Virus record (IMG/VR): IMGVR_UViG_3300046517_002304
Location: 248,001-312,000 of that record
Length of the DNA stretch: 64,000 nucleotides
Strand: one strand, 5' to 3'
Shown: piece by piece, positions 4,166 to 58,351 of the stretch
How the letters are laid out: each line of letters starts with the position of its first letter
Position numbering within the stretch: the first letter of the stretch is position 1
Notes under the pieces: generated by a model
What the model was told of the DNA's origin: nothing
The model's database searches: none
The model's input: only the letters and a program-made list of their open reading frames with translations
Made by a program: the position numbers and the translations under genes

Positions 4166-4396
4166 TCAGGTATTAATAAATTTTAAAACTTCAATAGCAA
4201 TCACGGCTACCCCAACGCCTATGAAGCACATTACTCCAAACATTAACATGACATATCTGGAGTTACTTCTATTTCCTGCCCGACACAGACCACAATCGTA
4301 TATCAATTCATGTCCGTCTATAATCATAGTTCGGCATGTTATATTATGCTTCTTACATTTATATCGGAAGATCAACGTCCTTACTTTAGCTTTCAT
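4166..4396 (-). CDS. MKA-start protein with Cys motifs and C-terminal TM helix
   Basis: CKKH...CGLC; hydrophobic tail. Confidence 0.7.
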   Translation of the reverse strand: MKAKVRTLIFRYKCKKHNITCRTMIIDGHELIYDCGLCRAGNRSNSRYVMLMFGVMCFIGVGVAVIAIEVLKFINT

Positions 4397-4706
4397 AATC
4401 GTCCTTGTATACTTTTCGGTAACGGTAAATAGTTGAGCGCATTTCCGTCAAAGTGTATTCCTTAAAAAACGCCGCACCAAAATCCTTCATCTTACCACTA
4501 CAAATTACACTTCCATCGTCTTTAAAAATAGTCAAAACACTGCTGGTCATTCCTCCTCCATTAGGCGGCACCACTCTACCGACTAATATAAGGTCTTTAT
4601 AAAAACGCTTTTCCAGCCTATTGTTAACCATATAAAAAGAAAGCGAATATTCGTATGTATTCTTTTTTTTCTCAGGCCCTACAGTAATTTTAACTTCAGC
4701 TTTCAT
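4386..4706 (-). CDS. MKAEVKI-family protein
   Basis: MKAEVKITVG. Confidence 0.85.
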   Translation of the reverse strand: MKAEVKITVGPEKKKNTYEYSLSFYMVNNRLEKRFYKDLILVGRVVPPNGGGMTSSVLTIFKDDGSVICSGKMKDFGAAFFKEYTLTEMRSTIYRYRKVYKDDYES

Positions 4707-4978
4707 TTGTTTAATCCATATGCGTTACGATAATAATATACTTCATGTCCAGCGATATCATTAGATTCATCAGACATTTCATACTTAAATGGACGATATG
4801 AGTATGACGCGCCAGAATTATCCTGATAAATATACAATCTTTTCTGGGAATAAACAACATACCCAACACAGTAATTGCCTGGAGTGTAAATGTATACAAT
4901 GCTATACAAATCACCGCTGGGTATAAAATGATATGGGTGTTCTTTAAAACGAATCTTATAATCAACAATGGCCTTCAT
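4703..4978 (-). CDS. MKAEVKI-family protein
   Basis: MKAIV...HPY...YYYRNAYGL. Confidence 0.8.
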   Translation of the reverse strand: MKAIVDYKIRFKEHPYHFIPSGDLYSIVYIYTPGNYCVGYVVYSQKRLYIYQDNSGASYSYRPFKYEMSDESNDIAGHEVYYYRNAYGLNK

Positions 4979-5253
4979 TCCATTCCCTTGCCAGTCCGAT
5001 ATTCATGTAACGCAATACCAAAGGCATCATCGCTAGAATACCATTTTTTAAAAACACCTTTGTTTACCGCAAATCCATCTCCTGTTTCGCCATAAACAAC
5101 AACTAAGCCGTCAAGATCAAACCTCACGCCTACTTTATGATTATTATCATCACGGTAAATCGTACAATATGGCATGCCACTACCATAACATACTTTTTTT
5201 ATCGCATATGGATGTTCGATATTTACTTCTTTTATAATTACTTCAGCCTTCAT
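4975..5253 (-). CDS. MKAEVKI-family protein
   Basis: MKAEVII...LHEYRTGKGME. Confidence 0.85.
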   Translation of the reverse strand: MKAEVIIKEVNIEHPYAIKKVCYGSGMPYCTIYRDDNNHKVGVRFDLDGLVVVYGETGDGFAVNKGVFKKWYSSDDAFGIALHEYRTGKGME

Positions 5254-5516
5254 ACATGCCCCAATTCTCTGAAACGAGTTTCATGAACATATTTCACTAT
5301 TTCATACAAAGCCTCATTAGGGTCAATAGTACGCAGTATATCACGATGATGATTTAAACAAGCATGAACGCGAACAGTGTTGTCAGACCAGTTAATCAAA
5401 CCTGCCAATCCACCATCCTGTAAAGATACTCTAATCATCTGATATGAAATATATTTCAGTCTATAGCCGAACATATCCGGCAACACTTCCAATTCAAATG
5501 AGTAAGGCTTAGTCAT
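5250..5516 (-). CDS. Hypothetical protein within array
   Basis: ATGA-coupled at both ends. Confidence 0.75.
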   Translation of the reverse strand: MTKPYSFELEVLPDMFGYRLKYISYQMIRVSLQDGGLAGLINWSDNTVRVHACLNHHRDILRTIDPNEALYEIVKYVHETRFRELGHV

Positions 5517-5779
5517 TCGTATCCCATCAACTTTCTTAGTTCGTGAATCCTAATGGCAATCTGATCGTCGGTTTCATTTTTACTAATACCAATATCACAA
5601 GTATTCTGAGAATTGTTATTAAAAACACTAGCCTCATCGCGCCTACGATTAATATACCCAACAAAAAATGTATTATCGCTATTCCTTAAGTCCGATCCAT
5701 AGAATGTCTTTTTAAGAGTATAAGGATGACTATTATTTTTTTCCTCAGACCCTAAAGTAATTTTAACTTCAGCTTTCAT
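5513..5779 (-). CDS. MKAEVKI-family protein
   Basis: MKAEVKITLG...IHELRKLMGYE. Confidence 0.85.
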   Translation of the reverse strand: MKAEVKITLGSEEKNNSHPYTLKKTFYGSDLRNSDNTFFVGYINRRRDEASVFNNNSQNTCDIGISKNETDDQIAIRIHELRKLMGYE

Positions 5780-6045
5780 TCCAACCCCTTTGATTTACGA
5801 TATTCGTGTAGAGCAATGCCGAAAGCATTATTACTATCATAATGTTTGTTAAAGCCTATTGCTTCAGAAGTTATATCATTATGATTGTAGAACATCACGC
5901 TACCGTCACCATGAAATCTAACGCCTATAGGGTTATCGTTGTTATCTTTCCAAACCGTATAATGATTACCGCCCAAAACATAAACTTTTTCTGTTTTGTA
6001 AATGATGTTATTTGCTAACTCTCTTACGGTAACTTCAGCTTTCAT
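5776..6045 (-). CDS. MKAEVKI-family protein
   Basis: MKAEVTV...LHEYRKSKGLE. Confidence 0.85.
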   Translation of the reverse strand: MKAEVTVRELANNIIYKTEKVYVLGGNHYTVWKDNNDNPIGVRFHGDGSVMFYNHNDITSEAIGFNKHYDSNNAFGIALHEYRKSKGLE

Positions 6046-6320
6046 TAGTTTCTCCCCAAATAATACTTGCGATAAAGATTTACCTTAAACAAACATGCTT
6101 CTGGCGTAATCCCATCAGGAAGATCAATAGTAGTTACACGCTTCTCCGCTACTTCATCATATATTGAAATTGTGCAATCGGTTAAATTAATAGCAGCAAC
6201 TCTTCCAAGGTTTTTGGCGAAAGGAATCAATAAATAAACAGCACCTTTGGTTGCAGTGGAGTTCCAGTGTATCCGATAAGGCGAATCTTCAACCATTGAT
6301 ATTTTGACTTCAGCTTTCAT
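6045..6320 (-). CDS. MKAEVKI-family protein
   Basis: Start moved to MKAEVKIS (ATGA overlap). Confidence 0.8.
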   Translation of the reverse strand: MKAEVKISMVEDSPYRIHWNSTATKGAVYLLIPFAKNLGRVAAINLTDCTISIYDEVAEKRVTTIDLPDGITPEACLFKVNLYRKYYLGRN

Positions 6321-6604
6321 TCCCATCCCTTTGATTTACGATATTCGTGTACTATCTGGCCAAATTCATCATCACTAGTGTATTGATTAATAGGTAGATT
6401 TAATTCACCATAGTCAAAAGTATTTCCATTTTTATTATAGACAGCAAAACTTTTAGCATTATCATTACTCTCCGCAAACCTAAGAGCGGCTTTATGATTA
6501 TTACCACAGATATAAAGCGTATAATATAACGAACCATTATCGTGGTGCGTTTTCTCAATCTTATATGGGTTACTACAAACAGATACCTTAACAGTTGCTT
6601 TCAT
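6317..6604 (-). CDS. MKAEVKI-family protein
   Basis: MKATVKV...VHEYRKSKGWE. Confidence 0.85.
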   Translation of the reverse strand: MKATVKVSVCSNPYKIEKTHHDNGSLYYTLYICGNNHKAALRFAESNDNAKSFAVYNKNGNTFDYGELNLPINQYTSDDEFGQIVHEYRKSKGWE

Positions 6605-6855
6605 TCGTACCCTTGTTCTTTTCTAAACTCATAAATCCTATGAGCTACTTCATCATTCGTCTCATTTACCAAAGTCATAAACTTAGAAGCAGTCTGACCG
6701 TGTAGATCAAACGCCACTATCGTATTTTGAGGACGATTTACATACCCAACAAAACCATTAGCATTACGAAAGTCCATTCCATATGCCGTAGAATGAAGCG
6801 TGTAAGGGTGCTTGTTAGACCTAGACCCTACAGTAATTTTAACACTAGCCTTCAT
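6601..6855 (-). CDS. MKAEVKI-family protein
   Basis: MKASVKI...IYEFRKEQGYE. Confidence 0.85.
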   Translation of the reverse strand: MKASVKITVGSRSNKHPYTLHSTAYGMDFRNANGFVGYVNRPQNTIVAFDLHGQTASKFMTLVNETNDEVAHRIYEFRKEQGYE

Positions 6856-7118
6856 TCGTATCCCTGTTCTTTCCTAATCTCATAAATCCTACAGGCTGCT
6901 TCGTTATTAGACTCGTAAAGAGAGAGAGGAAAACTAGCAAGAACAACACCATTATTATAAACAAATACAGTGTGATTTGAGCGATCTATCACACCAACCG
7001 TTTTCTCAAAACCATGCTGGTCTATTACAAATGTACTCTGAGTGCCTTCAGACATGCTATAAGGGTGGCTATTATTTTTTTTCTCAGGCCCCAAAGAGAT
7101 TTTAACAGTTGCTTTCAC
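6852..7118 (-). CDS. MKAEVKI-family protein (GTG start)
   Basis: GTGA overlap; (M)KATVKI...IYEIRKEQGYE. Confidence 0.8.
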   Translation of the reverse strand: MKATVKISLGPEKKNNSHPYSMSEGTQSTFVIDQHGFEKTVGVIDRSNHTVFVYNNGVVLASFPLSLYESNNEAACRIYEIRKEQGYE

Positions 7119-7387
7119 GTAGGCCACCCTTTACTTAAACGAAATTCATAGATTCTCTTAGCCACTTCTTCTAACATCTCCTCGTCTTTACCCGATTCTA
7201 CTGTAGTTAAGTGGTCTATACCATTAAAGGCTTTATTATAAATATTCATGTAAGAGTCACCAACATTCATCTTTCCAACAACTACATTCCCTGTAAAAGG
7301 TTTCTCCCAAAAAATATAATATCTACCATCCATAGTCCCAATCCAATAAGGATGCCCGCCAACAGTTATTTTAACTTCAGCTTTCAT
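7115..7387 (-). CDS. MKAEVKI-family protein
   Basis: MKAEVKITVGGHPY...IYEFRLSKGW. Confidence 0.85.
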   Translation of the reverse strand: MKAEVKITVGGHPYWIGTMDGRYYIFWEKPFTGNVVVGKMNVGDSYMNIYNKAFNGIDHLTTVESGKDEEMLEEVAKRIYEFRLSKGWPT

Positions 7388-7659
7388 GTTTCCCATCCAC
7401 TATACAAGCGAAATTCATAAATTCTCTTAGCAGCATTTTCTAAAGATTCCGGTGTAGCTTTTCCATCTATCCAGTCATGATGATGCACTCCGTTAAAACT
7501 CTTATTATAAACGGACACATACTTTTCATCCTTAGCCCATCTTCCTACAACCTTCGATGGATATACTCCTTTAAGCTTAACCATAATATAAGTATACCCA
7601 AATCCTTTAGAGAAATAGTAAGGATGCCCACCAACTGTAATTTTAACTTCTGCTTTCAT
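7384..7659 (-). CDS. MKAEVKI-family protein
   Basis: MKAEVKITVGGHPY...IYEFRLYSGW; close paralog of neighbour. Confidence 0.85.
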   Translation of the reverse strand: MKAEVKITVGGHPYYFSKGFGYTYIMVKLKGVYPSKVVGRWAKDEKYVSVYNKSFNGVHHHDWIDGKATPESLENAAKRIYEFRLYSGWET

Positions 7660-7898
7660 AGGTCGTGATTTTCCACATAACTGGCAATTACTGATGCTAC
7701 CTTTTTCAAATTTTTCGTCTCATAAACAGCATTAAATACCTGCATTCCCTTTTTATCAAATATTTCTAACGTACCGCTCTCGGTCAAAAACCTAGCAACC
7801 ATCGTATAATGGTCATAAAAATAATCCCATCCATAACAATGCATAATACGATAGTCCCCAATCATACTATAAACAATTATAGAAGATAATGCCTTCAT
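7656..7898 (-). CDS. MKA-start array protein
   Basis: MKALSS; coupled to downstream gene. Confidence 0.75.
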   Translation of the reverse strand: MKALSSIIVYSMIGDYRIMHCYGWDYFYDHYTMVARFLTESGTLEIFDKKGMQVFNAVYETKNLKKVASVIASYVENHDL

Positions 7899-7926
7899 AG
7901 GAATCCCTTAATATCCTTTAGAAAAA

Positions 7927-8217
7927 TCATTCCGTCCCAAAAAACTGTTTTCGGGAAGACCAAATTTGTTCGGCAACCTGATCCCTGGTCATATTCTCAT
8001 GACAACTAAAAGTAAATAAAGGACTACATTTATTATCATAAACAACAAATTTCTTACATGATTTAGACTTACTGTCATAGCTCATTGCGCCTACATCACG
8101 AAGTAATTTATAACTATAAACCCTATAATTAAAATCCCAGTCAAGCGCCGTCATGTGAATGCTATATGGATGATCACCTTCTGGTTTATTCACAGATAAT
8201 TTTACTTCAGCTTTCAC
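7927..8217 (-). CDS. MKAEVKI-family protein (GTG start)
   Basis: KAEVKLSV...HPY. Confidence 0.8.
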   Translation of the reverse strand: MKAEVKLSVNKPEGDHPYSIHMTALDWDFNYRVYSYKLLRDVGAMSYDSKSKSCKKFVVYDNKCSPLFTFSCHENMTRDQVAEQIWSSRKQFFGTE

Positions 8218-8477
8218 GCATCACCATTTATTCTTTGTAGTTCTGCGGCTAAGTCATTAGCGTCCCAATATTTTTGACTATAAGTACCAACAATTATTTG
8301 CAATCCTGATAAAGATACATCGTACCGTTCAAGGATATAGACACCAAGATTATTATCTCTAATCCTTCCCTTCTTCTCGCTAAAACCAGAGAAAACATTA
8401 TAATAACCATTGCCAATGTATACCGCATAATACAAAGGCTGGTGATTAATCTTCCAATCTGATAATATTGCTTTCAT
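8214..8477 (-). CDS. MKA-start array protein
   Basis: MKAILS; coupled. Confidence 0.75.
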   Translation of the reverse strand: MKAILSDWKINHQPLYYAVYIGNGYYNVFSGFSEKKGRIRDNNLGVYILERYDVSLSGLQIIVGTYSQKYWDANDLAAELQRINGDA

Positions 8478-8782
8478 ATATGTCCTAATTCCATCATTCT
8501 TTTAGCAAGAATAAATGTAAAAGACTCATACTCATTTGGCAAATATTCCCCTTCCCAAATTGTATTAACTTGATCATCAAACACTCTCATTACATTACTA
8601 TTTCCATCACAGGCACCAATGCTATAATAAGCGCCTTCTTCAGTAATCCTAGCAAATGAATAAAACTTCTTATTAAGATGTTTATACATTATAAAAGGAT
8701 GATATTTTGACGAACTGATAACATCGTATTCAATATATTTTGGAAATTTAAATACAACATCAATACTAACATTGGCTTTCAT
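8474..8782 (-). CDS. MKAEVKI-family protein
   Basis: MKANVSI. Confidence 0.75.
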   Translation of the reverse strand: MKANVSIDVVFKFPKYIEYDVISSSKYHPFIMYKHLNKKFYSFARITEEGAYYSIGACDGNSNVMRVFDDQVNTIWEGEYLPNEYESFTFILAKRMMELGHI

Positions 8783-9059
8783 GTTTACACCCAAATGCCT
8801 TACGTTTTTTGTAAATATGCTCTTCTATTTCTTCTTTACTCATAGCCTTATAATCACTTATAGATAACGTTTTAGATCCAACTCCTTTATTGGCATATAC
8901 TCTTAAGTCACGGATATATCCTGTACTGTTTGGCTTTTGATAACCACATACCAATTCGTTAGTGCTCTCAAGATAAGCGGCTATTCTTCCTAAAGTTGGA
9001 CTATCCCTAAAGACATAACCGTATCGGCTACCAAGACTAAGTTTAACTTCTGCCTTCAT
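8766..9059 (-). CDS. MKAEVKI-family protein
   Basis: MKAEVKLSLG. Confidence 0.8.
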   Translation of the reverse strand: MKAEVKLSLGSRYGYVFRDSPTLGRIAAYLESTNELVCGYQKPNSTGYIRDLRVYANKGVGSKTLSISDYKAMSKEEIEEHIYKKRKAFGCKHESQC

Positions 9060-9340
9060 TGTTTTAACCAATCTCTCTTTAATAATTCATTATGAACATA
9101 GTGAATTAAATGATCATGATTCGCAAATTTAGGAATTCCGTTGATTACTATATACTGCATATTATTAGGATCAGTTGAGCCATATAAACAGATTTGTTCC
9201 GAACCACATAAATGAACTGCTACTAGATTACCCATTACCCAAGGAGGTTGACCTACGTGAACATGTGTCTCTAAAGGAAGCACATCCTGAGCACAATAAT
9301 CAAATATCTTGTTTACTTCTATTTTAACTTCGGCTTTCAT
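9056..9340 (-). CDS. MKAEVKI-family protein
   Basis: MKAEVKIEV. Confidence 0.85.
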   Translation of the reverse strand: MKAEVKIEVNKIFDYCAQDVLPLETHVHVGQPPWVMGNLVAVHLCGSEQICLYGSTDPNNMQYIVINGIPKFANHDHLIHYVHNELLKRDWLKQ

Positions 9341-9597
9341 GGTTTCTCCAATCCAACCGAGATTCTGTATTCATGTAGCTTAGCTCCTACTGCTTCTAAA
9401 TCATCACCTTTTATACTAAGATAAATCGGAAGGCTATTATCTGATTGAATAACAGCCAACATTTTCTTATTCACGTAATACTTGCCAACTATTGCCATAC
9501 CATCTTGAGATATAAACCATTTCTCGTTATTTTTAAGATGATAAATTACATATGGATTATCATTGTTAACAATGGATATTTTAACCGAAGCTTTCAT
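9337..9597 (-). CDS. MKAEVKI-family protein
   Basis: MKASVKIS...LHEYRISVGLE. Confidence 0.85.
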   Translation of the reverse strand: MKASVKISIVNNDNPYVIYHLKNNEKWFISQDGMAIVGKYYVNKKMLAVIQSDNSLPIYLSIKGDDLEAVGAKLHEYRISVGLEKP

Positions 9598-9843
9598 TCT
9601 AATCCCTTTTTCATACGAAACTCATAAATGAACTCAGCTATTTCATCTAAATCACTCATATGAGGAGACAAATACACCGTCTCCCCCATTCCAACGTCAA
9701 CCTGTAGTGAGTTGTTTTCTTTTTTATACATGGCAACAACATGATGTCCACCAGGTTTGCAGAAATAAGTTCCGCCATCATATTGATAATACCAATATCG
9801 CGGTTCTTTTTTTTTCAAGAAAAACTTTTACTTCAGCTTTCAT
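9594..9843 (-). pseudogene. MKAEVKI-family gene frameshifted in an A9 run
   Basis: ATG 9843 MKAEVKVFLE; removing one A of the run at 9807-9815 restores the frame to IYEFRMKKGLE. Confidence 0.75.
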
Positions 9844-10091
9844 TAATCTTCCCACCCTTGATTAAACCTGTACGAATACACCCATCTAGCAACTTCATTT
9901 ACGTCTTTTGACTTAGTAGGAACAAAGAACGTGGACCCATTTGATCGGTAGATCTCTATTCTTTTTTTATTCGTGTCAAACTTTGCCGCTAAGTTGTTGT
10001 TATTTTTATTAGTGAACCAATACAACTGTGGGAAATCAGTAATATTATACGGAGGCTTGTTATTAACAGTGATTTTTACGGTTGCTTTCAT
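9843..10091 (-). CDS. MKAEVKI-family protein
   Basis: MKATVKIT...YSYRFNQGWE. Confidence 0.85.
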   Translation of the reverse strand: MKATVKITVNNKPPYNITDFPQLYWFTNKNNNNLAAKFDTNKKRIEIYRSNGSTFFVPTKSKDVNEVARWVYSYRFNQGWED

Positions 10092-10336
10092 AATTCCCAT
10101 CCTTGCACTGTTCTATAACTGTGTAGCCAAATCCCCGCTTCATCTACGTTAGTATTCGACCACCCGACAGTAATATTCTTTCCATTTGGAGGGAATATCA
10201 ATAGTCTACTGCCTAAAAACAATTTACCGTATATAGAAGATCCATCAGGTGGCGCGAACCAAACTTGGCCTTCTGCAACATAATGTGCCATATACGGATG
10301 TTTTTTATTAATAAAAATTTTGATTTCAGCTTTCAT
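10088..10336 (-). CDS. MKAEVKI-family protein
   Basis: MKAEIKI...LHSYRTVQGWE. Confidence 0.85.
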   Translation of the reverse strand: MKAEIKIFINKKHPYMAHYVAEGQVWFAPPDGSSIYGKLFLGSRLLIFPPNGKNITVGWSNTNVDEAGIWLHSYRTVQGWEL

Positions 10337-10581
10337 TAACCTTCCCACCCTTGCGCTACGCGATAGTTGTATAGGTAGTTTCCTATTTCATCTATGTCTA
10401 CGCTTGATGTACCAATGGTAATTTCATTTCCAACAGGCGAAAACATTACCATTTTGACTCCGAGCAAGAATTTACCGAATACGACATCGCCGTTAGTAAA
10501 CCAAACTTGTTTATCAGAGTAATGGTACTTCTTATAAGGATGCTTGTTATTAATAACGGTGATTTCTACAGATGCCTTCAT
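10336..10581 (-). CDS. MKAEVKI-family protein
   Basis: MKASVEI...YNYRVAQGWE. Confidence 0.85.
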   Translation of the reverse strand: MKASVEITVINNKHPYKKYHYSDKQVWFTNGDVVFGKFLLGVKMVMFSPVGNEITIGTSSVDIDEIGNYLYNYRVAQGWEG

Positions 10582-10829
10582 GGTTGCTCCCATCCCTGCT
10601 CTACTCTGTAGCGATGAATCAAATTTCCTGCATATTCTACGTCCGTACACATAGTAGAAACAATGATGCCTCCTCCTTTTGGAGGACATATCACTATTTT
10701 ACTGCCCCAAAAGAGCTTGCCGAATACCTTGTTTCCGTTCGGTGACGTAAACCAGGTTTGGAATTCGGAATATTGAAGTAAACCGTACGGATGTTTTTTA
10801 CCAATTGTTATTTTTACTTCAGCTTTCAT
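10578..10829 (-). CDS. MKAEVKI-family protein
   Basis: MKAEVKITIG...HRYRVEQGWE. Confidence 0.85.
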   Translation of the reverse strand: MKAEVKITIGKKHPYGLLQYSEFQTWFTSPNGNKVFGKLFWGSKIVICPPKGGGIIVSTMCTDVEYAGNLIHRYRVEQGWEQP

Positions 10830-11074
10830 TCCAATCCTTTTTTCAGCCGGATGAAATAAATCGCTCTGCCAACGTCATCTATTGTATCTTGCGTTTTAGT
10901 CTTAAATATCGCTACGGCCTTACTTTCTCCAAAGCAAGCATGCGCAACTGAAATTCTGGCGAAATATTTGCCGACTAATTTATTTTCATTATTTCTAAAC
11001 TCTATTCTGCGAGGTCCATCATAAGCCCATTTATATGGATGTTTTAGAACAGAGATAATTACGGACGCTTTCAT
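10826..11074 (-). CDS. MKAEVKI-family protein (first gene of operon)
   Basis: MKASVII...IRLKKGLE. Confidence 0.85.
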   Translation of the reverse strand: MKASVIISVLKHPYKWAYDGPRRIEFRNNENKLVGKYFARISVAHACFGESKAVAIFKTKTQDTIDDVGRAIYFIRLKKGLE

Positions 11075-11083
11075 GATTTCACC

Positions 11084-11112
11084 ACAATACCATAAAACCC
11101 CTGTAGAGTCAA
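11084..11112 (-). promoter_or_regulatory. Sigma70-type promoter for the MKAEVKI array
   Basis: TTGACT-17 nt-TATTGT, ending 9 nt before ATG 11074. Confidence 0.7.
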
Positions 11113-11425
11113 TAGGATTTTTTCCTGGTATTTTTGGGAAAACCCCTTGTGGCGATAAAGGGTATTTCCTGGATTTTTTTGAAATGGCCGAATGCGGAAA
11201 ATGTCCCTGAATGTTTATTAAAATGGCAGGGTGCCGGATGAATATGGAACCTTTAAATACCCCTTATGTTTCTAAAGGGGCGGGGTACCGGGAAAATAAA
11301 AGATGAGGGGAATGAGGATGGCTGTCCTGGTGGCGTAGCCCCCCATCTTACTCAGACCCCCCACATGTTCCGGAAGATAATTTATAGCAGCAAGGTTCTG
11401 CTACCAGTTATCCCTAGAGCATGTC

Positions 11426-11647
11426 CTACGCTGCGGTAGGGATGAACTCCTGATACCCGCTCTGTCTATCCAACGCAACCGCTACCTCTCCCGCACTCAC
11501 CGTCAAGTCCCCATGAACCTTGCCCCCTACCAGCACCCGCTTGGTATCCCGCAGTCCCACACTCCAGTGGTGGCAGCAGGTCAGCCCGCTCTCCCTGTCC
11601 CGCACGTAGACCAGACCATTCGGCAGCAGCTCGGCAGTCAGCATCAT
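11426..11647 (-). CDS. Hypothetical protein
   Basis: SD AGGAG; octamer upstream. Confidence 0.7.
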   Translation of the reverse strand: MMLTAELLPNGLVYVRDRESGLTCCHHWSVGLRDTKRVLVGGKVHGDLTVSAGEVAVALDRQSGYQEFIPTAA

Positions 11648-11668
11648 ACTTGGCTCTCCTTACAACCA

Positions 11669-11899
11669 TTAAAGGATAACTAACTGATCCGTGAACGTGT
11701 TCAGCGTGCCTGTCCCGCCCGATGCCCGGTAAGCCTCCCAGCATCGGGCCGCATAGACGACTTGCCCCAGCGAAACGAATGGCAGCCTCTTGCTGGCTTC
11801 CCGCTGGAACTCAGCCGCCTGCTGCCGATTGAACAGGCGAACTAACTCAACCCCGCCGGGCACCTTACGCAAGGCAAGTTGCGACGTTATCCGCATCAT
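11669..11899 (-). CDS. Hypothetical protein
   Basis: Start at MMRITS with AAGGGG SD. Confidence 0.6.
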   Translation of the reverse strand: MMRITSQLALRKVPGGVELVRLFNRQQAAEFQREASKRLPFVSLGQVVYAARCWEAYRASGGTGTLNTFTDQLVIL

Positions 11900-12108
11900 G
11901 GGCAACCCCCTTAATAATAAACAAACAGGTGAACAGGTGTATAGAAAGGCCCACCCGCGGCGTAGATTGAAACGCACGCGGGGGGCGGTAGCAGCTCTAC
12001 TTCCTCATTCCCTGAATGACCGCGATGACGCCCGCAAAGTAGTAGGGGGTTGCTTCCGTCATGTTACTCTCCTGTAAGAGGTCGGGGATACAGAAGGGTA
12101 GGGATAAC

Positions 12109-18003: not shown

Positions 18004-18282
18004 TTGTCCTATTCACCTTGCAGGTTATCCCCCTGATAAGCGGCGTAGCTCTTCTCATCGTGCCAAGTCAGCTTGACCGCACGGCAGGTCGTGAAATCGT
18101 GGTTCCAGAAAAAATCGTAATAGCGGGGGGTGAGATTTCGGTGTTCCCCGCGAGCAAATTGCTCCGCAGTGAATTCAATCATACCGGTTATCCTTTTAAT
18201 CGGGTGAAACTTACAACCGATTACGGATAACTAGAATGACCCTCCCTAGGTATCACTAGGGAGGGTCGGAGGGACGAACGCA

Positions 18283-19994: not shown

Positions 19995-20068
19995 TGGGGA
20001 TGCTAGGACTCGAACCTAGGACCAAAAAATTATGAGTTTTCTGCTCTGACCAACTGAGCTACACCCCC
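19995..20068 (-). tRNA. tRNA with CAT anticodon (elongator Met or Ile2)
   Basis: Cloverleaf: GGGGGTG/CATCCCC acceptor, CTCATAA loop, GGTTCGAGTCC T-arm; CCA not encoded. Confidence 0.9.
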
Positions 20069-23491: not shown

Positions 23492-23776
23492 CTATTCGCT
23501 CACGTAGACTTTGCCGTGAGCGATGTAGTCCAGTGCCGTCGCCCAATCGCATCGCGGCTCTTCGCAAATGATCGTTGTCTTGCCGTCAAACGTGACCCCG
23601 ACAGAAATCAGTCTATCAGGATTTGTCGGAAGGGCCAGCAGAGTAATATTACGCTGCCGCCACTTGTTGACGGTGGCTCCGATGAGCGGAAGCTGTACGA
23701 TTTCTTCCATGCTCAACGTGGTATTGTTATGAATCTGCATAACGGCCTGATTGTTTGTTTTCATAATGAGCATCAA
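23492..23776 (-). CDS. Hypothetical protein
   Basis: Octamer-bounded ORF. Confidence 0.65.
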   Translation of the reverse strand: MMLIMKTNNQAVMQIHNNTTLSMEEIVQLPLIGATVNKWRQRNITLLALPTNPDRLISVGVTFDGKTTIICEEPRCDWATALDYIAHGKVYVSE

Positions 23777-24197: not shown

Positions 24198-24677
24198 ATG
24201 CAAAAGTTTAACTGCGGGACTTGTGGAAAAGAAGTTTATCGACCGACTTGGAGAATCAAAAAATGTTTAACTGGCATTTTTTACTGTAGCCAGAAATGTT
24301 GCTGTGATGCTAATAACAAAAAAAAGGCGGATCAGGTTAGTGGTATGAGAAAAGGCGAAGTACTAAACCACTGTTCCACGTCCAGTAGGTTCGCAACGAT
24401 ACGGAAAAATGCTAGGCGAACATACCTTGCGTCAGACAAACCTAAGTGCTGCCTAGTATGCGGGTATTCTAAGCATATTGAAATTTGCCATGTTCAGGGG
24501 ATTACAACATTCCCCGATGAGACGAAGTTAATCGTTATCAACGATCTGACAAATCTCGTTGCTTTATGTCCGACCCATCATTGGGAGTTAGACAATAAGC
24601 AGCTTGACGAAGAAATACTCCCGGAAAGATTCGCACTTTCGACCCCCGGGTTAGAAACCCGATGCTCTATCTGCTGA
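24198..24677 (+). CDS. HNH endonuclease with N-terminal Cys-rich zinc finger
   Basis: CLVC...EICHV...NLVALCPTHH; antisense to surrounding genes. Confidence 0.8.
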   Translation: MQKFNCGTCGKEVYRPTWRIKKCLTGIFYCSQKCCCDANNKKKADQVSGMRKGEVLNHCSTSSRFATIRKNARRTYLASDKPKCCLVCGYSKHIEICHVQGITTFPDETKLIVINDLTNLVALCPTHHWELDNKQLDEEILPERFALSTPGLETRCSIC

Positions 24678-24688
24678 GCTACGAGAGC
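24616..24688 (-). tRNA. tRNA-Arg(TCT)
   Basis: Cloverleaf: GCTCTCG/CGGGAGT acceptor, TTTCTAA loop; atypical T-loop TGCGAAT. Confidence 0.85.
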
Positions 24689-24744
24689 AACTGACAGACA
24701 ACAATGGATAACTCAGGAGTTCCTGAGTTATCCTTACCTGAAAT

Positions 24745-25878: not shown

Positions 25879-26148
25879 TCAGCCGCGATTGTCCTCTTGC
25901 CCCTCAACCAACATTGCGGGGACAGTGATGCGACCAGTCAGCATGCCCATCATCGCCCGCCGTGGTGCCGCATAGGTTTCGTAATCAATGCTCAACGCTG
26001 GCGTAGCGACTACCAGATCGGTGCGAGTGACGTAGAAGTATTTCGGGTATTTCAGAGGATTGAAATTGAAGAACGTCTGAAATTGTTCAAGCGTGCGGCT
26101 GGCGTTGCGGTAAACGTAGCCAGAGGCTCTGAGTACTTCAGGATTCAT
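25879..26148 (-). CDS. Hypothetical protein
   Basis: AAGGA SD; stop in octamer. Confidence 0.7.
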   Translation of the reverse strand: MNPEVLRASGYVYRNASRTLEQFQTFFNFNPLKYPKYFYVTRTDLVVATPALSIDYETYAAPRRAMMGMLTGRITVPAMLVEGQEDNRG

Positions 26149-26178
26149 AATCGGTTCCTTTAATTACTAAAGGATAAC

Positions 26179-26442
26179 TCAGCCGCGAAGATACAGCCGT
26201 TCACCCTTCACGATGACGTAGCAACTGCCGGCGTTGCTGTAGCAGATACAGTAAACGCGATACAGCTTCGTATCGCCGTTGAAGCGGAGCATTTTGTCAG
26301 TGCTGATTTTGCTACCGTAGCCGTCTTCCCCTTGCCCTGGGGCTAACTGAAGCATACCACGGCGAGGAACAGGCCGCTCAATCAACTCATAGTTGTCGGC
26401 GTATGTAATCGCCGGGCCACAAGATCCAGAGAGGATAGACAT
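26179..26442 (-). CDS. Phage hypothetical protein (GYG.KI.T...RVYCICYSNAGS motif)
   Basis: SD GGAG; stop in octamer. Confidence 0.75.
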   Translation of the reverse strand: MSILSGSCGPAITYADNYELIERPVPRRGMLQLAPGQGEDGYGSKISTDKMLRFNGDTKLYRVYCICYSNAGSCYVIVKGERLYLRG

Positions 26443-26525
26443 TGAATACTCCGGTGATTTGTAAGGGGGATTTACATCATGGCGACTGTCGAACCCGCCG
26501 CGATAACCCCCAGATGCAGGACGAT

Positions 26526-26722
26526 GGATAACTAGCTGCCCCCATAGTTATCCATAGCTAAGGTACGGACTATCATTTAGATTCCCCTGCTAGTTATCCA
26601 TAGCTAAGGTACGGAACAATACTAGGATGCCCCCGTTAGTTATCCATAGCTTAGGTCCGGCCGAACATAGCTGGGGCCAGTCGAAATAAAAAATGCCCCT
26701 CAGCCAATCAAGGCTGAGGGGA
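26526..26722. repeat. Three direct repeats TAGTTATCCATAGCT(A/T)AGGT at 46-bp period, plus terminator
   Basis: Octamers at 26546, 26592, 26638. Confidence 0.85.
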
Positions 26723-26801
26723 CTAACTAAGGCGGGACATTATGCCCGCAATCGTGGAGGTCCGCCAATCAGGCGGGCCAGTTGAGTCTAACTATGGATA
26801 A

Positions 26802-27590
26802 CTATTCGTCGCTCTCTTCCCATTCTTCATCCCGAGCAACTTCAGCCGTTGCCGTGCTCCGCCCCGGTGCCGCTGTCTTTTCTACCGTAATATAATTCAG
26901 GACACGCATAGACCGCGTATCGCGGACATACTCTAGGTTTCGCTCCTGTTGTAATTCGTGCGGTAGCTTGGCGTATGACGACGGGTAGAGGGAGGGGTCC
27001 AATACCCAAACGGTTTCGGCCTCCAATCCCTTAGCTTTATGCGTCGTCGTCAACAATACCGCGTGCTTTACGTCGCCGGCGTCATTGACTTCCGCGAAGA
27101 TACTGCTAATTAATTCCTTCAACGCTTTCGCAGTATCGGTCCCCTCAGTCAGAGCGATGAGAGTATCGCATTTATCATTAAGAGTTTCCGCCGCACGACC
27201 CGCATTTTTCCGCTTTTCCAGTTTCGTCAACTCCCGACCGCGATATGTTTCAATCCGTTCAATGAGAGTCGGGATATCGTCGGTCTTCATCCGATCAATC
27301 AGATTGATGAGGCCCTCCCCAAAATCGTTGCGGCCTGCAATCTGGACTTTGAGATGACGCCTCAGAAGTTTCCAGACAAGCGTTGCAAGGGGAGCATTGT
27401 TCCGACATTGAACCATATCCCCTGGGGCAATCAAATCAATCGCCGCTGCCAGAGGCATCGTATTGACTTCCCCCTGAGGGGCTGATGCCATTGCTTCAAA
27501 GGCAGGAACGAACGCCTGAGCAATTTCAACGTGCGACTTCGGGCACCGTCGCGTCTTCGTCAGCGTCAAGAGAGTCAAGCCGCGAGACAT
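26802..27590 (-). CDS. UvrD/Rep-like SF1 helicase, C-terminal part
   Basis: Motifs IV (TRRCP), V (TTHKAKGLE), VI (ERNLEYVRDTRS). Confidence 0.85.
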   Translation of the reverse strand: MSRGLTLLTLTKTRRCPKSHVEIAQAFVPAFEAMASAPQGEVNTMPLAAAIDLIAPGDMVQCRNNAPLATLVWKLLRRHLKVQIAGRNDFGEGLINLIDRMKTDDIPTLIERIETYRGRELTKLEKRKNAGRAAETLNDKCDTLIALTEGTDTAKALKELISSIFAEVNDAGDVKHAVLLTTTHKAKGLEAETVWVLDPSLYPSSYAKLPHELQQERNLEYVRDTRSMRVLNYITVEKTAAPGRSTATAEVARDEEWEESDE

Positions 27591-27639
27591 ACTTGTTATC
27601 CTTTAAAAGTGTGCGGAGTTGATGGAAGTTAAAGGATAA

Positions 27640-28605
27640 CTAGGCGGATAGACGACGCTCAAACAATTGCATAGAATCTTCCGCTGCTCCGCAAAAGCCG
27701 TAGATAGCCTGATTCTCATCGCCCACCGCGATAATCCTGCCATTCTTGCCCGCGACCGTGAACGCCATTTCAATTCGGCACATATTCAGGTCTTGAACTT
27801 CGTCAACCAGCACGTTATCATAAGTCGGCAACGTAATCTTATTGACAATCGGAATCCAAATTTGATCGTCAAAATCAAATTCCCGCGTATTCTTGCGTGC
27901 GGCATCCAAAACCTTTGGAACCAATTCAAAAATCCGCTCTACTTCGTCGCCAATTTCAACGCTATGATATTCGCAGAGTTGCGTCAGATTTTCGGTTGTC
28001 GGTGCCAGCAATTTGTTTTTGCAGAGGGAAACCAACTTGACGACCGCATACTTGATACGGTTTTTATCGTTGTCGTCCATCCCCTCAGGGAGCATTGCAT
28101 CAACGCAATTATGCGTTTTGTATTCCTTCAATTCGGCACCCTTATAGAATGCCCGAATTGCACTCCAGCCGAAAGCATGGAACGTGCTAGTGGCCGTTCC
28201 CTCAGGCATGCGTGCTTTCAACTCTCGGGCGATTTTGTTATTAAACGCCAGAGCGATGACGCTACCAGTGAGGCGGGCGGCACCCATGACAATCGTTGTC
28301 GTCTTGCCCGTTCCCGCCAGTGCTTTGATAATCAGGTGGGAAGTCCCATTCTCCATTTCTTCCCATATCGCAATCTGCTGATCCGACCCCTTAAAGGTGG
28401 GGAGAGGAATTTTCGTAATCACCTCCTTAACATACTTGGCTTTCTGAGTATGTTTGCACTGGACTTCACCGGCGGCCTTATCAAACCCCTCAGGATTACG
28501 GGCCGACTTTTCATAGTAGCCCGGGCAACCATAAAACTTGCCGAAACTACTTTTCCGAGCAACCAGCGTTTTGTCGCACTTAGGGCAGAAATATTCGCTC
28601 ATCAT
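27640..28605 (-). CDS. UvrD/Rep-like SF1 helicase, N-terminal part with topoisomerase-type C4 zinc finger
   Basis: ALAGTGKT, STFH, VDEVQD, VGDENQAIYGF; CPKC...FYGC. Confidence 0.9.
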   Translation of the reverse strand: MMSEYFCPKCDKTLVARKSSFGKFYGCPGYYEKSARNPEGFDKAAGEVQCKHTQKAKYVKEVITKIPLPTFKGSDQQIAIWEEMENGTSHLIIKALAGTGKTTTIVMGAARLTGSVIALAFNNKIARELKARMPEGTATSTFHAFGWSAIRAFYKGAELKEYKTHNCVDAMLPEGMDDNDKNRIKYAVVKLVSLCKNKLLAPTTENLTQLCEYHSVEIGDEVERIFELVPKVLDAARKNTREFDFDDQIWIPIVNKITLPTYDNVLVDEVQDLNMCRIEMAFTVAGKNGRIIAVGDENQAIYGFCGAAEDSMQLFERRLSA

Positions 28606-28999
28606 AATCTTTCAGCAAGGGAATTCAAATCCAGTTGCCGTATTGTGGATAACTATTGCTACCCAATGGCAATTCCGTATCTCGTATCTTAGATACGGAT
28701 AACTATGGGGGAGAGGCGTTCTAACTCTACGCTTTGCCTCTCCCCCGTTTTGCGTCGGCCTCCGCACATTAGGCAGGGATAACTCCCCGACCTGTAACGT
28801 GGCATAAGCGACCCTCCGAGGTGTTACGTCGTAATGAGCGACATCCTACCGGCGTCCACTTATGCCGTGTCTGAATTTTTAGGATTGTTGTAATGCCTCT
28901 TATTCTCCTGCAAGTCAAATGAAGCGACCTCAGTCAAGAATATTTAGCTTGTAATGGTCGCATAGGCCAAGCCACAGCTTCCATAGACTTACAACAATT

Positions 29000-29233
29000 C
29001 TAGGAATTCAGCAAATCCGCAATTTCTTGATTACGGATAACTACTGGTTTCGTGATATCGATGTTGAGGGCGGCTCTTGCCCCTTCCAAGTCACCCTCTT
29101 CTAGATAAAACGTGTCGGCGGCATCAGACAAACCGATATCGACTAGCTGATTAACCAGCTCAGCAACCCGCTTCTTACTCATACGAACGGGAGCGTCAAC
29201 CTTAACCAGCAGATTCACCGTTCGTTTTTTCAT
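29000..29233 (-). CDS. Hypothetical protein
   Basis: Start region is tandemly duplicated. Confidence 0.65.
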   Translation of the reverse strand: MKKRTVNLLVKVDAPVRMSKKRVAELVNQLVDIGLSDAADTFYLEEGDLEGARAALNIDITKPVVIRNQEIADLLNS

Positions 29234-29277
29234 GGTTTTCCTGATGGAGTTCGTTTTTTCATGGTTTTCCTGATGGA
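29220..29277. repeat. Exact 29-bp tandem duplication
   Basis: GTTCGTTTTTTCATGGTTTTCCTGATGGA x2. Confidence 0.9.
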
Positions 29278-29546
29278 TCAGGGATAACTAAGAGAGATGC
29301 CCTATTCGCTTGCTACGTCTTCGGGCTACGATTTTTACTGAAGAGTTCTGCTCTTCGCGGCAAGATTCGTCGGATACGCCTATCTCTCGAGGAACAATGG
29401 ATAACTAATTTGTTCTAGCCGTTATTCAGATTCCCGATTTTCACCGAAAGCCCGCTGATCGGGCGAGCCAAATCCTAGAGCTGGAGGCTTTCGCCCCACG
29501 GTCTCCTAACGACCAGAACGAATTAGTTAAATGAATAGGGATAACT

Positions 29547-58248: not shown

Positions 58249-58267
58249 GGTTTTCCTTTATTGTAAG

Positions 58268-58351
58268 TGCCGGAAGAGGGATTTGAACCCACACACCCCG
58301 AAGGATACGACATTTTAAGTGTCGTGCGGCTGCCAATTACGCCATTCCGGC
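58268..58351 (-). tRNA. tRNA-Leu(TAA)
   Basis: GCCGGAA/TTCCGGC acceptor, CTTAAAA loop, long variable arm, TTCAAAT T-loop. Confidence 0.9.

What the first reader, a model, noticed from the sequence alone, without database searches (positions are those of the whole stretch)
26802..28605. SF1 helicase split in two by a 46-bp octamer-bounded inverted repeat
Seen: motifs I-III lie in 27640-28605 (ends ...FERRLSA*) and motifs IV-VI in 26802-27590 (MSRGLTLLTLTKTRRCP...), in different frames. The gap holds a perfect 12-bp IR (GTTATCCTTTAA 27595-27606 / TTAAAGGATAAC 27629-27640). One arm overlaps the TAG stop; the other supplies an AAGGA SD for the second ORF. Known: UvrD/Rep helicases are normally one chain, and the residue count between motifs III and IV here suggests almost nothing is missing. 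Inference: the octamer element can land inside a gene and give a tolerated two-subunit enzyme. Alternatively the ~50-nt gap is bypassed, as in T4 gene 60, although no matched landing codon is visible.
Basis: partly seen in the sequence, partly recalled or inferred. Interest (0 to 1): 0.75.

Follow-up and report, generated by a model that had tools for sequence, protein, structure and literature searches.

The report
Conserved two-gene split phage helicase
A giant soil phage and its relatives encode their only UvrD-type DNA helicase as two back-to-back genes, cut exactly between the two motor domains by a 49-base spacer that looks like the phage's usual gene-start signal; this is a real, long-kept gene split, not an error, a dead gene or ribosome hopping.

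Summary
Window 27640-28605(-) encodes a Zn-ribbon plus helicase motifs I-III (321 aa). Window 26802-27590(-) encodes motifs IV-VI (262 aa). They lie in different frames, 49 nt apart, and the 12-bp perfect inverted repeat is there.

The window is part of a 511-kb phage genome with terminal repeats, from soil and rhizosphere. TAGTTATCC is not a special insert. It occurs 133 times on the gene strand of a 150-kb block, at almost every gene junction, and looks like a phage-specific promoter or gene-start signal.

Three more distinct lineages (four contigs, 55-61% aa identity) carry the same split at the same residue. Each has the motif and its own SD and ATG, and the stop-to-ATG offsets cover all three frames. 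Synonymous sites are saturated while both halves keep every motif.

The next relatives are single chains with no residues missing. One of them, L005, sits on a contig that also uses the motif.

The second repeat arm is not conserved, so the 46-bp repeat is not the unit. A fold of the two halves rebuilds the ATP cleft (score 0.79 against 0.00 for controls).

Verdict: a conserved gene fission giving a probable heterodimeric SF1 helicase. This is a new variant of the phage "genes-in-pieces" kind. Gene-60-type bypass is not supported.

The parts
27640..28605 (-). Helicase N-half gene (321 aa). Zn ribbon at residues 7-30 (28516-28587). Motif I AGTGKTT at 28297-28317, motif II DEVQD at 27790-27804, motif III GDENQAIYGFCGA at 27685-27723. 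The stop TAG is at 27640-27642.
   Evidence: Aligns to Rep 16-262 and UvrD 22-267.
26802..27590 (-). Helicase C-half gene (262 aa). Motif IV TRRCP at 27540-27554, motif V THKAKGLE at 27021-27044, motif VI YVRDTRS at 26910-26930. The stop TAG (26802-26804) is again the TAG of a TAGTTATCC motif.
   Evidence: Aligns to UvrD 437-616.
27591..27639 (-). 49-nt untranslated spacer between the two cistrons.
   Evidence: Identical in contigs of independent runs.
27634..27642 (-). TAGTTATCC gene-junction motif. Its TAG is the stop codon of the N-half.
   Evidence: The same arrangement occurs in L003 and L004.
27629..27640 (-). 5' arm of the 12-bp inverted repeat (GTTATCCTTTAA on the gene strand).
27595..27606 (-). 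3' arm of the inverted repeat (TTAAAGGATAAC on the gene strand). It contains the AAGGA Shine-Dalgarno (27599-27603) of the C-half. This arm is not conserved in relatives.
27623..27623 (-). Predicted transcription start: an A preceded by C, 10 nt after the motif. It lies in the hairpin loop. This is inferred, not measured.
28647..28655 (-). TAGTTATCC motif 41 nt upstream of the N-half ATG. A second copy lies at 28697-28705.
26796..26804 (-). TAGTTATCC motif that closes the C-half gene.

Best explanation
This is a genuine, evolutionarily conserved fission of a phage UvrD/PcrA-like SF1 helicase gene into two separately translated cistrons.

The cut lies in the linker between motif III and motif IV. 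That is the boundary between RecA-like domains 1A and 2A; the boundary itself is taken from memory of the UvrD structure papers.

The spacer is a standard intergenic module of this phage lineage. It runs stop codon (the TAG of TAGTTATCC), motif, about 35 nt, Shine-Dalgarno, ATG.

The two products (Zn-ribbon-1A/1B and 2A/2B) most likely reassemble non-covalently. The ATP site and DNA-motor cleft would then be formed in trans. That assembly is inferred.

The motif itself is most likely the core of a phage-specific promoter of about 20 bp, with a start site 10 nt downstream. This would give leaderless mRNAs for about 60 genes and SD-bearing leaders of about 30 nt for others, including both helicase halves. 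This too is inferred.

In this phage the motif also pairs with the SD region of the C-half (the 12-bp repeat). On read-through transcripts that pairing could tie C-half translation to termination of the N-half. This last point is speculative.
For: Shown:
- ORFs, frames and repeat are as described.
- Independent assemblies reproduce the gap.
- The nearest N-half homologs P0002, P0003 and P0004 (323-328 aa, 56-58% identity) are N-halves only. Each is followed after 47-50 nt by a 237-239 aa UvrD_C ORF. L012 repeats the L002 type.
- All gaps carry (T)AGTTATCC and their own SD and ATG. Stop-to-ATG offsets are 50, 51, 52 and 53 nt.
- Fused relatives align across the junction with no net residue difference. 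These are P0005 (551 aa), P0006 (548 aa) and about 45 metagenome loci.
- L005, which carries fused P0005, uses the same motif at its gene junctions but has none inside the helicase gene.
- The two halves are equally conserved (N 57-59%, C 55-61% to the window). All motifs are intact. dN is 0.28-0.43 while dS is saturated.
- This is the only UvrD-family gene in the 511-kb genome.
- Complex prediction scored 0.79, against 0.00 for the best of three controls. That mark was reached by 51 of 78 solved complexes and 2 of 108 mismatched pairs. The interface uses motifs I and III and the C-tail of chain 1, and motifs IV, V and VI of chain 2.

For the motif as promoter:
- There are 133 co-oriented copies confined to genome 259-410 kb.
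- The ATG begins 10-13 nt after the motif in 60 genes, with no SD.
- In the other 73 genes a pyrimidine-purine step sits at the same position in 43, against a 23% background (p=7e-11). An SD follows further down.
- The genome encodes two sigma-70-family proteins.
Against: - No RNA or protein data exist. No RNA run was listed, so separate translation, assembly and activity are all inferred.
- The complex score may only reflect memory of single-chain SF1 structures (caveat).
- N-part and C-part trees disagree. The window's N-half groups with the split clade (99/98). Its C-half groups with fused P0006 and P0005 (97/92; 67% identity to P0006). The history is therefore not a simple single fission with vertical descent. 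AU tests are inconclusive at p=0.10 and p=0.02, the second chosen after seeing the tree.
- No consensus RNA structure is found across the four gaps. L002 shows no excess folding, z=0.16.
- The promoter reading rests on sequence statistics only. No T7-like or RpoB-like polymerase was detected (the control for one search was uninformative).
Confidence: 0.8

Rival explanations
1. Translational bypassing as in T4 gene 60. Ribosomes take off at the last sense codon before the UAG, skip about 50 nt and land in the C-half frame, making a single-chain helicase.
For: The gap is 49 nt. A UAG directly follows the last sense codon. A hairpin starts at the stop codon.
Against: - The take-off codon would be GCC (GCU in L003 and L004, GGG in L002), and no matching in-frame landing codon exists at the C-half start.
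- All four lineages keep a good SD 7-9 nt before an ATG.
- Gap lengths of 50-53 nt put the halves in all three relative frames.
- Gap sequence outside the motif and SD is not conserved.
- The hairpin arm is absent in relatives.
Confidence: 0.03
2. The gene is a decaying pseudogene, and the two ORFs are remnants without function.
For: It is an interrupted enzyme gene in a region full of small ORFans.
Against: - Four distinct lineages keep both ORFs intact over about 580 codons, with all seven helicase motifs.
- dN is 0.28-0.43 against saturated dS.
- There is no second UvrD-family gene in the genome to cover for a loss.
Confidence: 0.04
3. The 46-bp inverted repeat is itself a small mobile element (MITE-like) that inserted into the gene.
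For: - It has perfect 12-bp terminal repeats.
- Three other 5' leaders in the window have the same plan, motif-N31-GGATAAC-N4-5-ATG, at 18233, 16134 and 13522.
Against: - The second arm is missing in L002, L003 and L004, which share the same split.
- There is no target-site duplication.
- The interior is not repeated elsewhere beyond the first 25 nt, which match an ordinary cassette near 23494.
- The first arm is simply the gene-junction motif.
Confidence: 0.07
4. The halves are real proteins but no longer work together. They have sub-functionalised: the N-half as a Zn-ribbon DNA binder or partial ATPase, the C-half as something else.
For: Separate predicted promoters would allow separate expression. 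The N and C trees disagree.
Against: - Motifs IV-VI, including the arginine of motif VI, have no role without domain 1A, yet they are invariant.
- The halves are always adjacent and co-oriented.
- The predicted interface is the canonical cleft.
Confidence: 0.05
5. Assembly or sequencing artefact.
For: It is a metagenome-derived record. In run X4 two contigs meet at 27614/27615, inside the gap.
Against: The sequence is identical in contigs from several independent samples. The same split occurs in four distinct lineages from other samples and other assemblers.
Confidence: 0.01

Closest known systems
[quoted passage not shown] Related 'genes in pieces' are nrdA-a/b of phage Aeh1 and T4 topoisomerase genes 39/60 (review PMC2988022).
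   Same: A phage DNA-metabolism enzyme is cut into two adjacent cistrons at a functionally central place. In 44RR the cut is made by a short untranslated spacer with no endonuclease gene in it. The products must reassemble, and for 43A/43B of phage 25 and NrdA of Aeh1 they do and are active.
   Different: - Here the enzyme is an SF1 helicase, cut between its two RecA-like domains.
- The spacer is the lineage's own repeated gene-start module.
- No homing endonuclease lies in or beside the gap in any of the four lineages. HNH ORFs are nearby, at window 24198-24677 and L003 2617-3333.
- Activity is untested.
PeSL (promoter-early stem-loop) mobile regulatory cassettes of T4-type phages (PMC2839356, PMC4122927).
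   Same: Both are short, highly repeated promoter-plus-hairpin modules at the boundaries of small genes in plastic regions. PeSLs are proposed to mediate indels and module exchange by recombination. Here the first 25 nt of the gap recur at other junctions, and the N and C trees conflict.
   Different: - PeSL promoters are sigma-70-like and their stem-loops are terminators. This motif has no -35/-10 layout, and the gap hairpin has no U-tract.
- No PeSL is reported inside a conserved enzyme gene.
- Promoter activity and recombination are not shown here.
T4 gene 60 translational bypass.
   Same: A coding gap of about 50 nt, a UAG right after the last sense codon, and a hairpin at that point.
   Different: There are no matched take-off and landing codons. 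Each lineage has an independent SD and ATG, the relative frame varies, and the gap sequence is not conserved.
Single-chain phage and bacterial UvrD/Rep/PcrA helicases, for example Pseudomonas phage NP1 and JG054 'pcrA', and E. coli Rep and UvrD.
   Same: Same Pfam domains, same motifs I-VI, same order.
   Different: Those are one polypeptide. Identity to cultured-phage helicases is only 35-38%. This lineage also has an N-terminal Zn ribbon.

Membership tests
SF1A UvrD/Rep/PcrA-like helicase | N-terminal ATP-binding domain with Walker A (motif I), DExx (motif II) and motif III | tested here: met
   Pfam UvrD-helicase E=1.9e-26. AGTGKTT, DEVQD and GDENQAIYGF are present and conserved. Aligns to Rep and UvrD.
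SF1A UvrD/Rep/PcrA-like helicase | C-terminal domain with motifs IV, V and VI | tested here: met
   Pfam UvrD_C E=7e-9. TRRCP, THKAKGLE and YVRDTRS are invariant or nearly so in six relatives.
SF1A UvrD/Rep/PcrA-like helicase | Both RecA-like domains on one polypeptide | tested here: not met
   There are two ORFs in different frames with stops between them. The same holds in L002, L003, L004 and L012.
SF1A UvrD/Rep/PcrA-like helicase | DNA-dependent ATPase and unwinding activity | not testable with these tools
   The only support is a predicted heterodimer: score 0.79 against 0.00 for the best control, a mark reached by 51 of 78 solved complexes and 2 of 108 mismatched pairs.
T4 gene-60-type translational bypass | Identical or cognate take-off and landing codons flanking the gap | tested here: not met
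   Take-off would be GCC, GCU or GGG. No in-frame match exists at the C-half start in the window, L003 or L004.
T4 gene-60-type translational bypass | Stop codon right after the take-off codon, with a hairpin at the take-off site | tested here: met
   A UAG is followed by a 12-bp stem in the window. The stem is not conserved in relatives.
T4 gene-60-type translational bypass | Downstream part lacks its own initiation signals and is made only as a fusion | tested here: not met
   An SD and ATG are conserved in all four lineages. The relative frame varies.
Phage 'genes in pieces' with an intercistronic untranslated spacer (43A/43B type) | Short non-coding spacer, no inserted ORF, two cistrons that together equal one ancestral gene | tested here: met
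   The spacer is 49 nt. Alignment to fused relatives shows no net loss of residues.
Phage 'genes in pieces' with an intercistronic untranslated spacer (43A/43B type) | Products associate and are active | not testable with these tools
   Prediction only.
PeSL-like mobile regulatory cassette | Repeated promoter-containing module at many gene boundaries | tested here: inconclusive
   There are 133 co-oriented copies with fixed spacing to the ATG or to a Y-R step. Promoter activity is not measured, and the motif is not sigma-70-like.
PeSL-like mobile regulatory cassette | Marks indel or exchange points between related genomes | tested here: inconclusive
   Present in split relatives and absent from the helicase gene of fused L005. 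The N/C tree conflict is suggestive only.
MITE-like inverted-repeat element | Terminal inverted repeats plus target-site duplication plus many copies of the whole unit | tested here: not met
   The repeats are present, but there is no duplication and no second copy of the unit. The second arm is absent in relatives with the same split.
Split intein or intron | Extra intein residues at the split ends, or a catalytic RNA in the gap | tested here: not met
   There are no extra residues at the junction. The 49-nt gap has no Rfam match at gathering score.

The most novel reading that the evidence does not exclude
The TAGTTATCC cassette is a self-contained, recombinogenic promoter and leader module of a clade of soil megaphages. 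It entered the inter-domain linker of the helicase gene and produced an SF1 helicase whose ATP site is assembled from two polypeptides. It now acts as a joint at which N and C halves are exchanged independently between phages. The window's N-half is nearest the split clade, while its C-half is nearest a fused relative. In this phage, the motif-SD hairpin would also couple translation of the two halves.
Probability: 0.2. Interest if true: 0.7.

Novelty: new variant of a known kind. Interest (0 to 1): 0.5.

Why it matters
SF1 helicases are textbook single-chain motors, in which ATP binds in the cleft between two RecA-like domains. A naturally conserved version with each domain on its own polypeptide would be useful in three ways.

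- It would be a ready-made system for asking how much the covalent linker contributes to coupling ATP hydrolysis to translocation.
- It adds a helicase to the short list of phage 'genes in pieces'.
- It shows that a gene can be split by acquiring nothing more than the lineage's ordinary gene-start module. That is a simple route to gene fission which needs no homing endonuclease or intron.

The surrounding motif system may be of wider interest than the split itself. It comprises 133 copies, and about 60 genes appear leaderless.

Tried and rejected
- Alternative genetic code. ORF coverage under TAG, TGA or TAA reassignment gave no sign of recoding. TAG read-through would not join the frames anyway.
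- RNA evidence. No RNA run was listed.
- Consensus RNA structure of the four gaps. None was found.
- Other short C-half-like proteins as independent splits. P0157, P0209, P0268 and P0274 are contig-end fragments. P0135 on L008 has at least 93 nt of non-helicase sequence upstream and no motif, but the contig is too short to judge. L060 is a multiply frameshifted high-GC locus and was set aside.
- IMG/VR scan for the motif-N10-ATG pattern.
- IMG/VR relatives of the N-half. There was one, distant and fused.
- Cultured phages. The best matches are 35-38% identical and are single genes.
- Other split enzymes in the window. Pfam on ten larger ORFs found none. PolA and RNR lie outside the motif block.
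- DNA for the P0006 contig was not available, so whether that fused relative uses the motif is unknown.
- AU tests of the N/C tree conflict were inconclusive.
- The reverse complement of the motif resembles a conserved 16S rRNA stretch. This is from memory only and was not pursued.
Full report
**What is there**

The window is bases 248001-312000 of a 511,233-bp virus record with direct terminal repeats, rated complete. Runs that hold this stretch are soil and rhizosphere metagenomes. The standard code fits the genome, and reassigning a stop codon does not improve ORF coverage.

On the minus strand there are two ORFs:
- 27640-28605 encodes 321 aa. It has a Topo-I-type Zn ribbon and Pfam UvrD-helicase (E=1.9e-26).
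- 26802-27590 encodes 262 aa with UvrD_C (E=7e-9).

Motifs I, II and III lie in the first ORF. Motifs IV, V and VI lie in the second.

The stop TAG (27640-27642) and the next ATG (27588-27590) are separated by 49 nt. The frames differ, and the C-frame carries a TAA five codons before its ATG. No read-through or single frameshift can therefore fuse the two.

The 12-bp inverted repeat is exact. As RNA it folds into a 12-bp stem with a 22-nt loop (-17.7 kcal/mol, z=-1.9).

**Not an artefact**

Logan contigs from independent samples reproduce 26000-29500 without a single difference in runs X1 and X3. Run X6 covers 27186-27657 cleanly. In X4 two contigs meet inside the loop, at 27614/27615. No RNA run could be listed.

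**The octamer is the phage's ordinary gene-junction signal**

- TAGTTATCC occurs 99 times in the window, against 0.3 expected.
- In the whole genome it occurs 133 times on the minus strand and 14 times on the plus strand. Apart from three outlying copies, all lie between 259 and 410 kb. Density falls from 19 to 3 copies per 10 kb as GC falls from 52% to 39%.
- The conserved core is t-TAGTTATCC-a-T-(a/t)-a.
- In 75 of 133 copies the TAG is the in-frame stop of the upstream ORF.
- In 60 copies the next ATG begins 10-13 nt after the motif, with no Shine-Dalgarno.
- In the other 73 copies, the position where that A would stand is a purine preceded by a pyrimidine in 43 cases. The background is 23% (p=7e-11). 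An SD and ATG follow 25-45 nt further on.

I read this as a phage-specific promoter of about 20 bp. Its start site would be fixed 10 nt after the motif, giving leaderless mRNAs for the short class and SD-bearing leaders for the long class. This is inference from sequence statistics only.

The genome encodes two sigma-70-family proteins. No T7-like or RpoB-like polymerase was detected, but the control for the T7-like search was uninformative.

Both helicase halves belong to the long class, with the motif 41 and 43 nt before their ATGs. Each half is bracketed by motifs, so each is a normal 'gene unit' of this genome.

**The split is shared and old**

The nearest N-half homologs, P0002, P0003 and P0004, are 323-328 aa long and 56-58% identical. 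They are N-halves only. On their contigs (L002, L003, L004) each is followed after 47-50 nt by a 237-239 aa UvrD_C ORF. A fifth locus, L012, has the same gap as L002.

The gaps read as follows:
- L003 and L004: ...RLSA, then TAGTTATCC.
- L002: ...RLAG, then TAA plus 8 nt, then AGTTATCC.

Each gap is followed by an SD and by ATG-x-CGY-GGN (M-x-R-G-L). Stop-to-ATG offsets are 50, 51, 53 and, in the window, 52 nt, so all three relative frames occur.

Identity to the window is 57-59% for N-halves and 55-61% for C-halves. All motifs are intact. dN is 0.28-0.43 in both halves, while dS is saturated in 11 of 12 comparisons.

This is the only UvrD-family gene in the genome.

**Relatives that are not split**

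P0005 (551 aa, 44% to the N-half) and P0006 (548 aa, 45%) are single chains, and so are about 45 more distant metagenome loci. Fragmentary and frameshifted loci are set aside under 'tried and rejected'. None of the distant fused loci carries the motif in any number.

Across the junction the fused proteins read RL-x-x-(S/T)-x-RG(V/L)..LPLT.TRRCPK. The split ones read RLSA|MS-RGL. No residues were lost.

L005 carries the fused P0005. It has ten copies of tTAGTTATCCcTTAA at its gene junctions and none inside the helicase gene. The fission therefore arose within a lineage that already used the motif, by gain of one more junction module inside the gene.

Among 1.8 billion representatives, the C-half finds 7205 relatives. 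Nearly all of the best 150 are 480-900 aa long.

**What the inverted repeat is**

Only the first arm, which is the motif, is conserved. The second arm (GGATAAC) is specific to this phage.

Three other leaders in the window have the same plan, motif-N31-(a)GGATAAC-N4-5-ATG, at 18233, 16134 and 13522. In all of them the motif pairs with the SD region.

The L003 and L004 gaps also fold so that the SD is paired (z=-2.0 and -3.1). L002 does not (z=0.16), and RNAalifold finds no consensus structure.

A role in coupling C-half translation to termination of the N-half on read-through transcripts is possible but speculative. Transcripts from the predicted internal start at 27623 would lack the 5' arm.

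**Do the halves work together?**

The N-half aligns to Rep 16-262 and UvrD 22-267. The C-half aligns to UvrD 437-616. By my recollection of the UvrD domain limits, the cut is at the 1A/2A boundary.

A complex prediction of N(60-321) with C(1-240) scored 0.79 in three runs. The best of three controls scored 0.00. That mark was reached by 51 of 78 solved complexes and 2 of 108 mismatched pairs.

The interface uses residues 87-101 (motif I), 297-304 (motif III) and 316-321 of the N-half. On the C-half it uses 2-16 (motif IV), 183-190 (motif V) and 211-225 (motif VI). As the tool warns, this may reflect memory of single-chain helicases. It shows likeness, not binding.

**An unexplained wrinkle**

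In a tree of the N-part, the four split sequences form a clade (99/98) that is sister to P0005 plus P0006. In the C-part tree, the window groups with P0006 and P0005 (97/92). Its C-half is 67% identical to P0006, more than to any split relative.

AU tests do not settle the matter. The C data do not reject a split clade (p=0.10). The N data weakly reject window+P0005+P0006 (p=0.02, chosen after seeing the tree). Exchange of one half by recombination at or near the junction is a reasonable reading, but it is not shown.

**Comparison with what is known**

Phage enzymes in pieces are known. Gene 43 of Aeromonas phage 44RR is cut by a short intercistronic untranslated sequence. nrdA of Aeh1 and T4 genes 39/60 are cut by homing-endonuclease genes. 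The polymerase and reductase pieces reassemble into active enzymes (PMC2988022).

Repeated promoter and stem-loop cassettes (PeSLs) that mediate module shuffling are known in T4-type phages (PMC2839356, PMC4122927).

In full-text searches of the held library I found no report of a UvrD-type helicase split between its RecA domains. Some SF2 YprA-family defence helicases are described as split into several genes.

The case is therefore a new variant of a known kind. The gene-60 bypass, intein, intron, MITE, pseudogene and artefact readings each fail a defining test; see the membership table.

**Verdict**

Noticed in passing
window 11400-64000 and on to genome 410 kb (G000:C1:259000-410000), minus strand: There are 133 co-oriented copies of TAGTTATCC at gene junctions in a 150-kb block of a 511-kb phage. 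The TAG doubles as the upstream stop codon in 75 copies. About 60 genes start 10-13 nt after the motif with no Shine-Dalgarno, which suggests leaderless mRNAs. A Y-R step stands at the same position in the other genes. Motif density and GC both decline along the block.
   Followed up: partly
window 4166-11074 (-): This is an array of about 26 paralogous small genes of 74-117 aa, with the pattern MKAEVKITVG...HPY...EYRK..GWE. They are packed with 4-nt overlaps, have 34-36% GC and carry no motif. The array sits directly beside the left edge of the motif block. Function is unknown.
   Followed up: partly
window about 12828, 15383, 17887, 19738, 22254, 23900, 26553; tandem at 26537-26660: These are palindromic versions of the motif, GGATAACTAg-N5-8-cTAGTTATCC, preceded by a conserved GTACCTAAGATAT. 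One site is a 46-bp unit repeated 2.7 times. They are found only in the GC-rich part of the window and could be operator-like or terminator-like sites.
   Followed up: no
window 18233, 16134, 13522 (motif positions, minus strand): Three more 5' leaders are built like the helicase gap, motif-N31-GGATAAC-N4-5-ATG. Two of them share the same interior sequence, so they are paralogous cassettes.
   Followed up: partly
window 24198-24677 (+) and L003 2617-3333 (-): HNH endonuclease-like ORFs lie on the opposite strand near the helicase. The window ORF matches HNH_2 at E=1.8e-4 and overlaps tRNA-Arg(tct) at 24615-24689. In L003 the ORF (a faint HNH_3 match) lies directly after the C-half.
   Followed up: no
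window 19995-20068, 24615-24689, 58267-58351 (-): tRNA-Met(cat), tRNA-Arg(tct) and tRNA-Leu(taa) genes lie inside the motif block.
   Followed up: no
window 11000-12000 (genome about 259 kb): GC rises abruptly from about 36% to about 52% at the left edge of the motif block, then declines gradually to the genome mean of about 38% over 100 kb. This is unusual for one phage genome. Whether the block was acquired or reflects a transcription or replication gradient is open.
   Followed up: no
G000:C1:37994-38653 (-): The only DNA_pol_A match lies in a 409-aa open frame and covers model positions 108-354 of 381. It may be a short or divided polymerase. It lies outside the motif block.
   Followed up: no
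L008 1-816: A C-half-only helicase gene (P0135, 240 aa, 44% identity) has at least 93 nt of non-helicase sequence upstream and no TAGTTATCC. It may be an independent split in another lineage, but the contig is too short to tell.
   Followed up: partly
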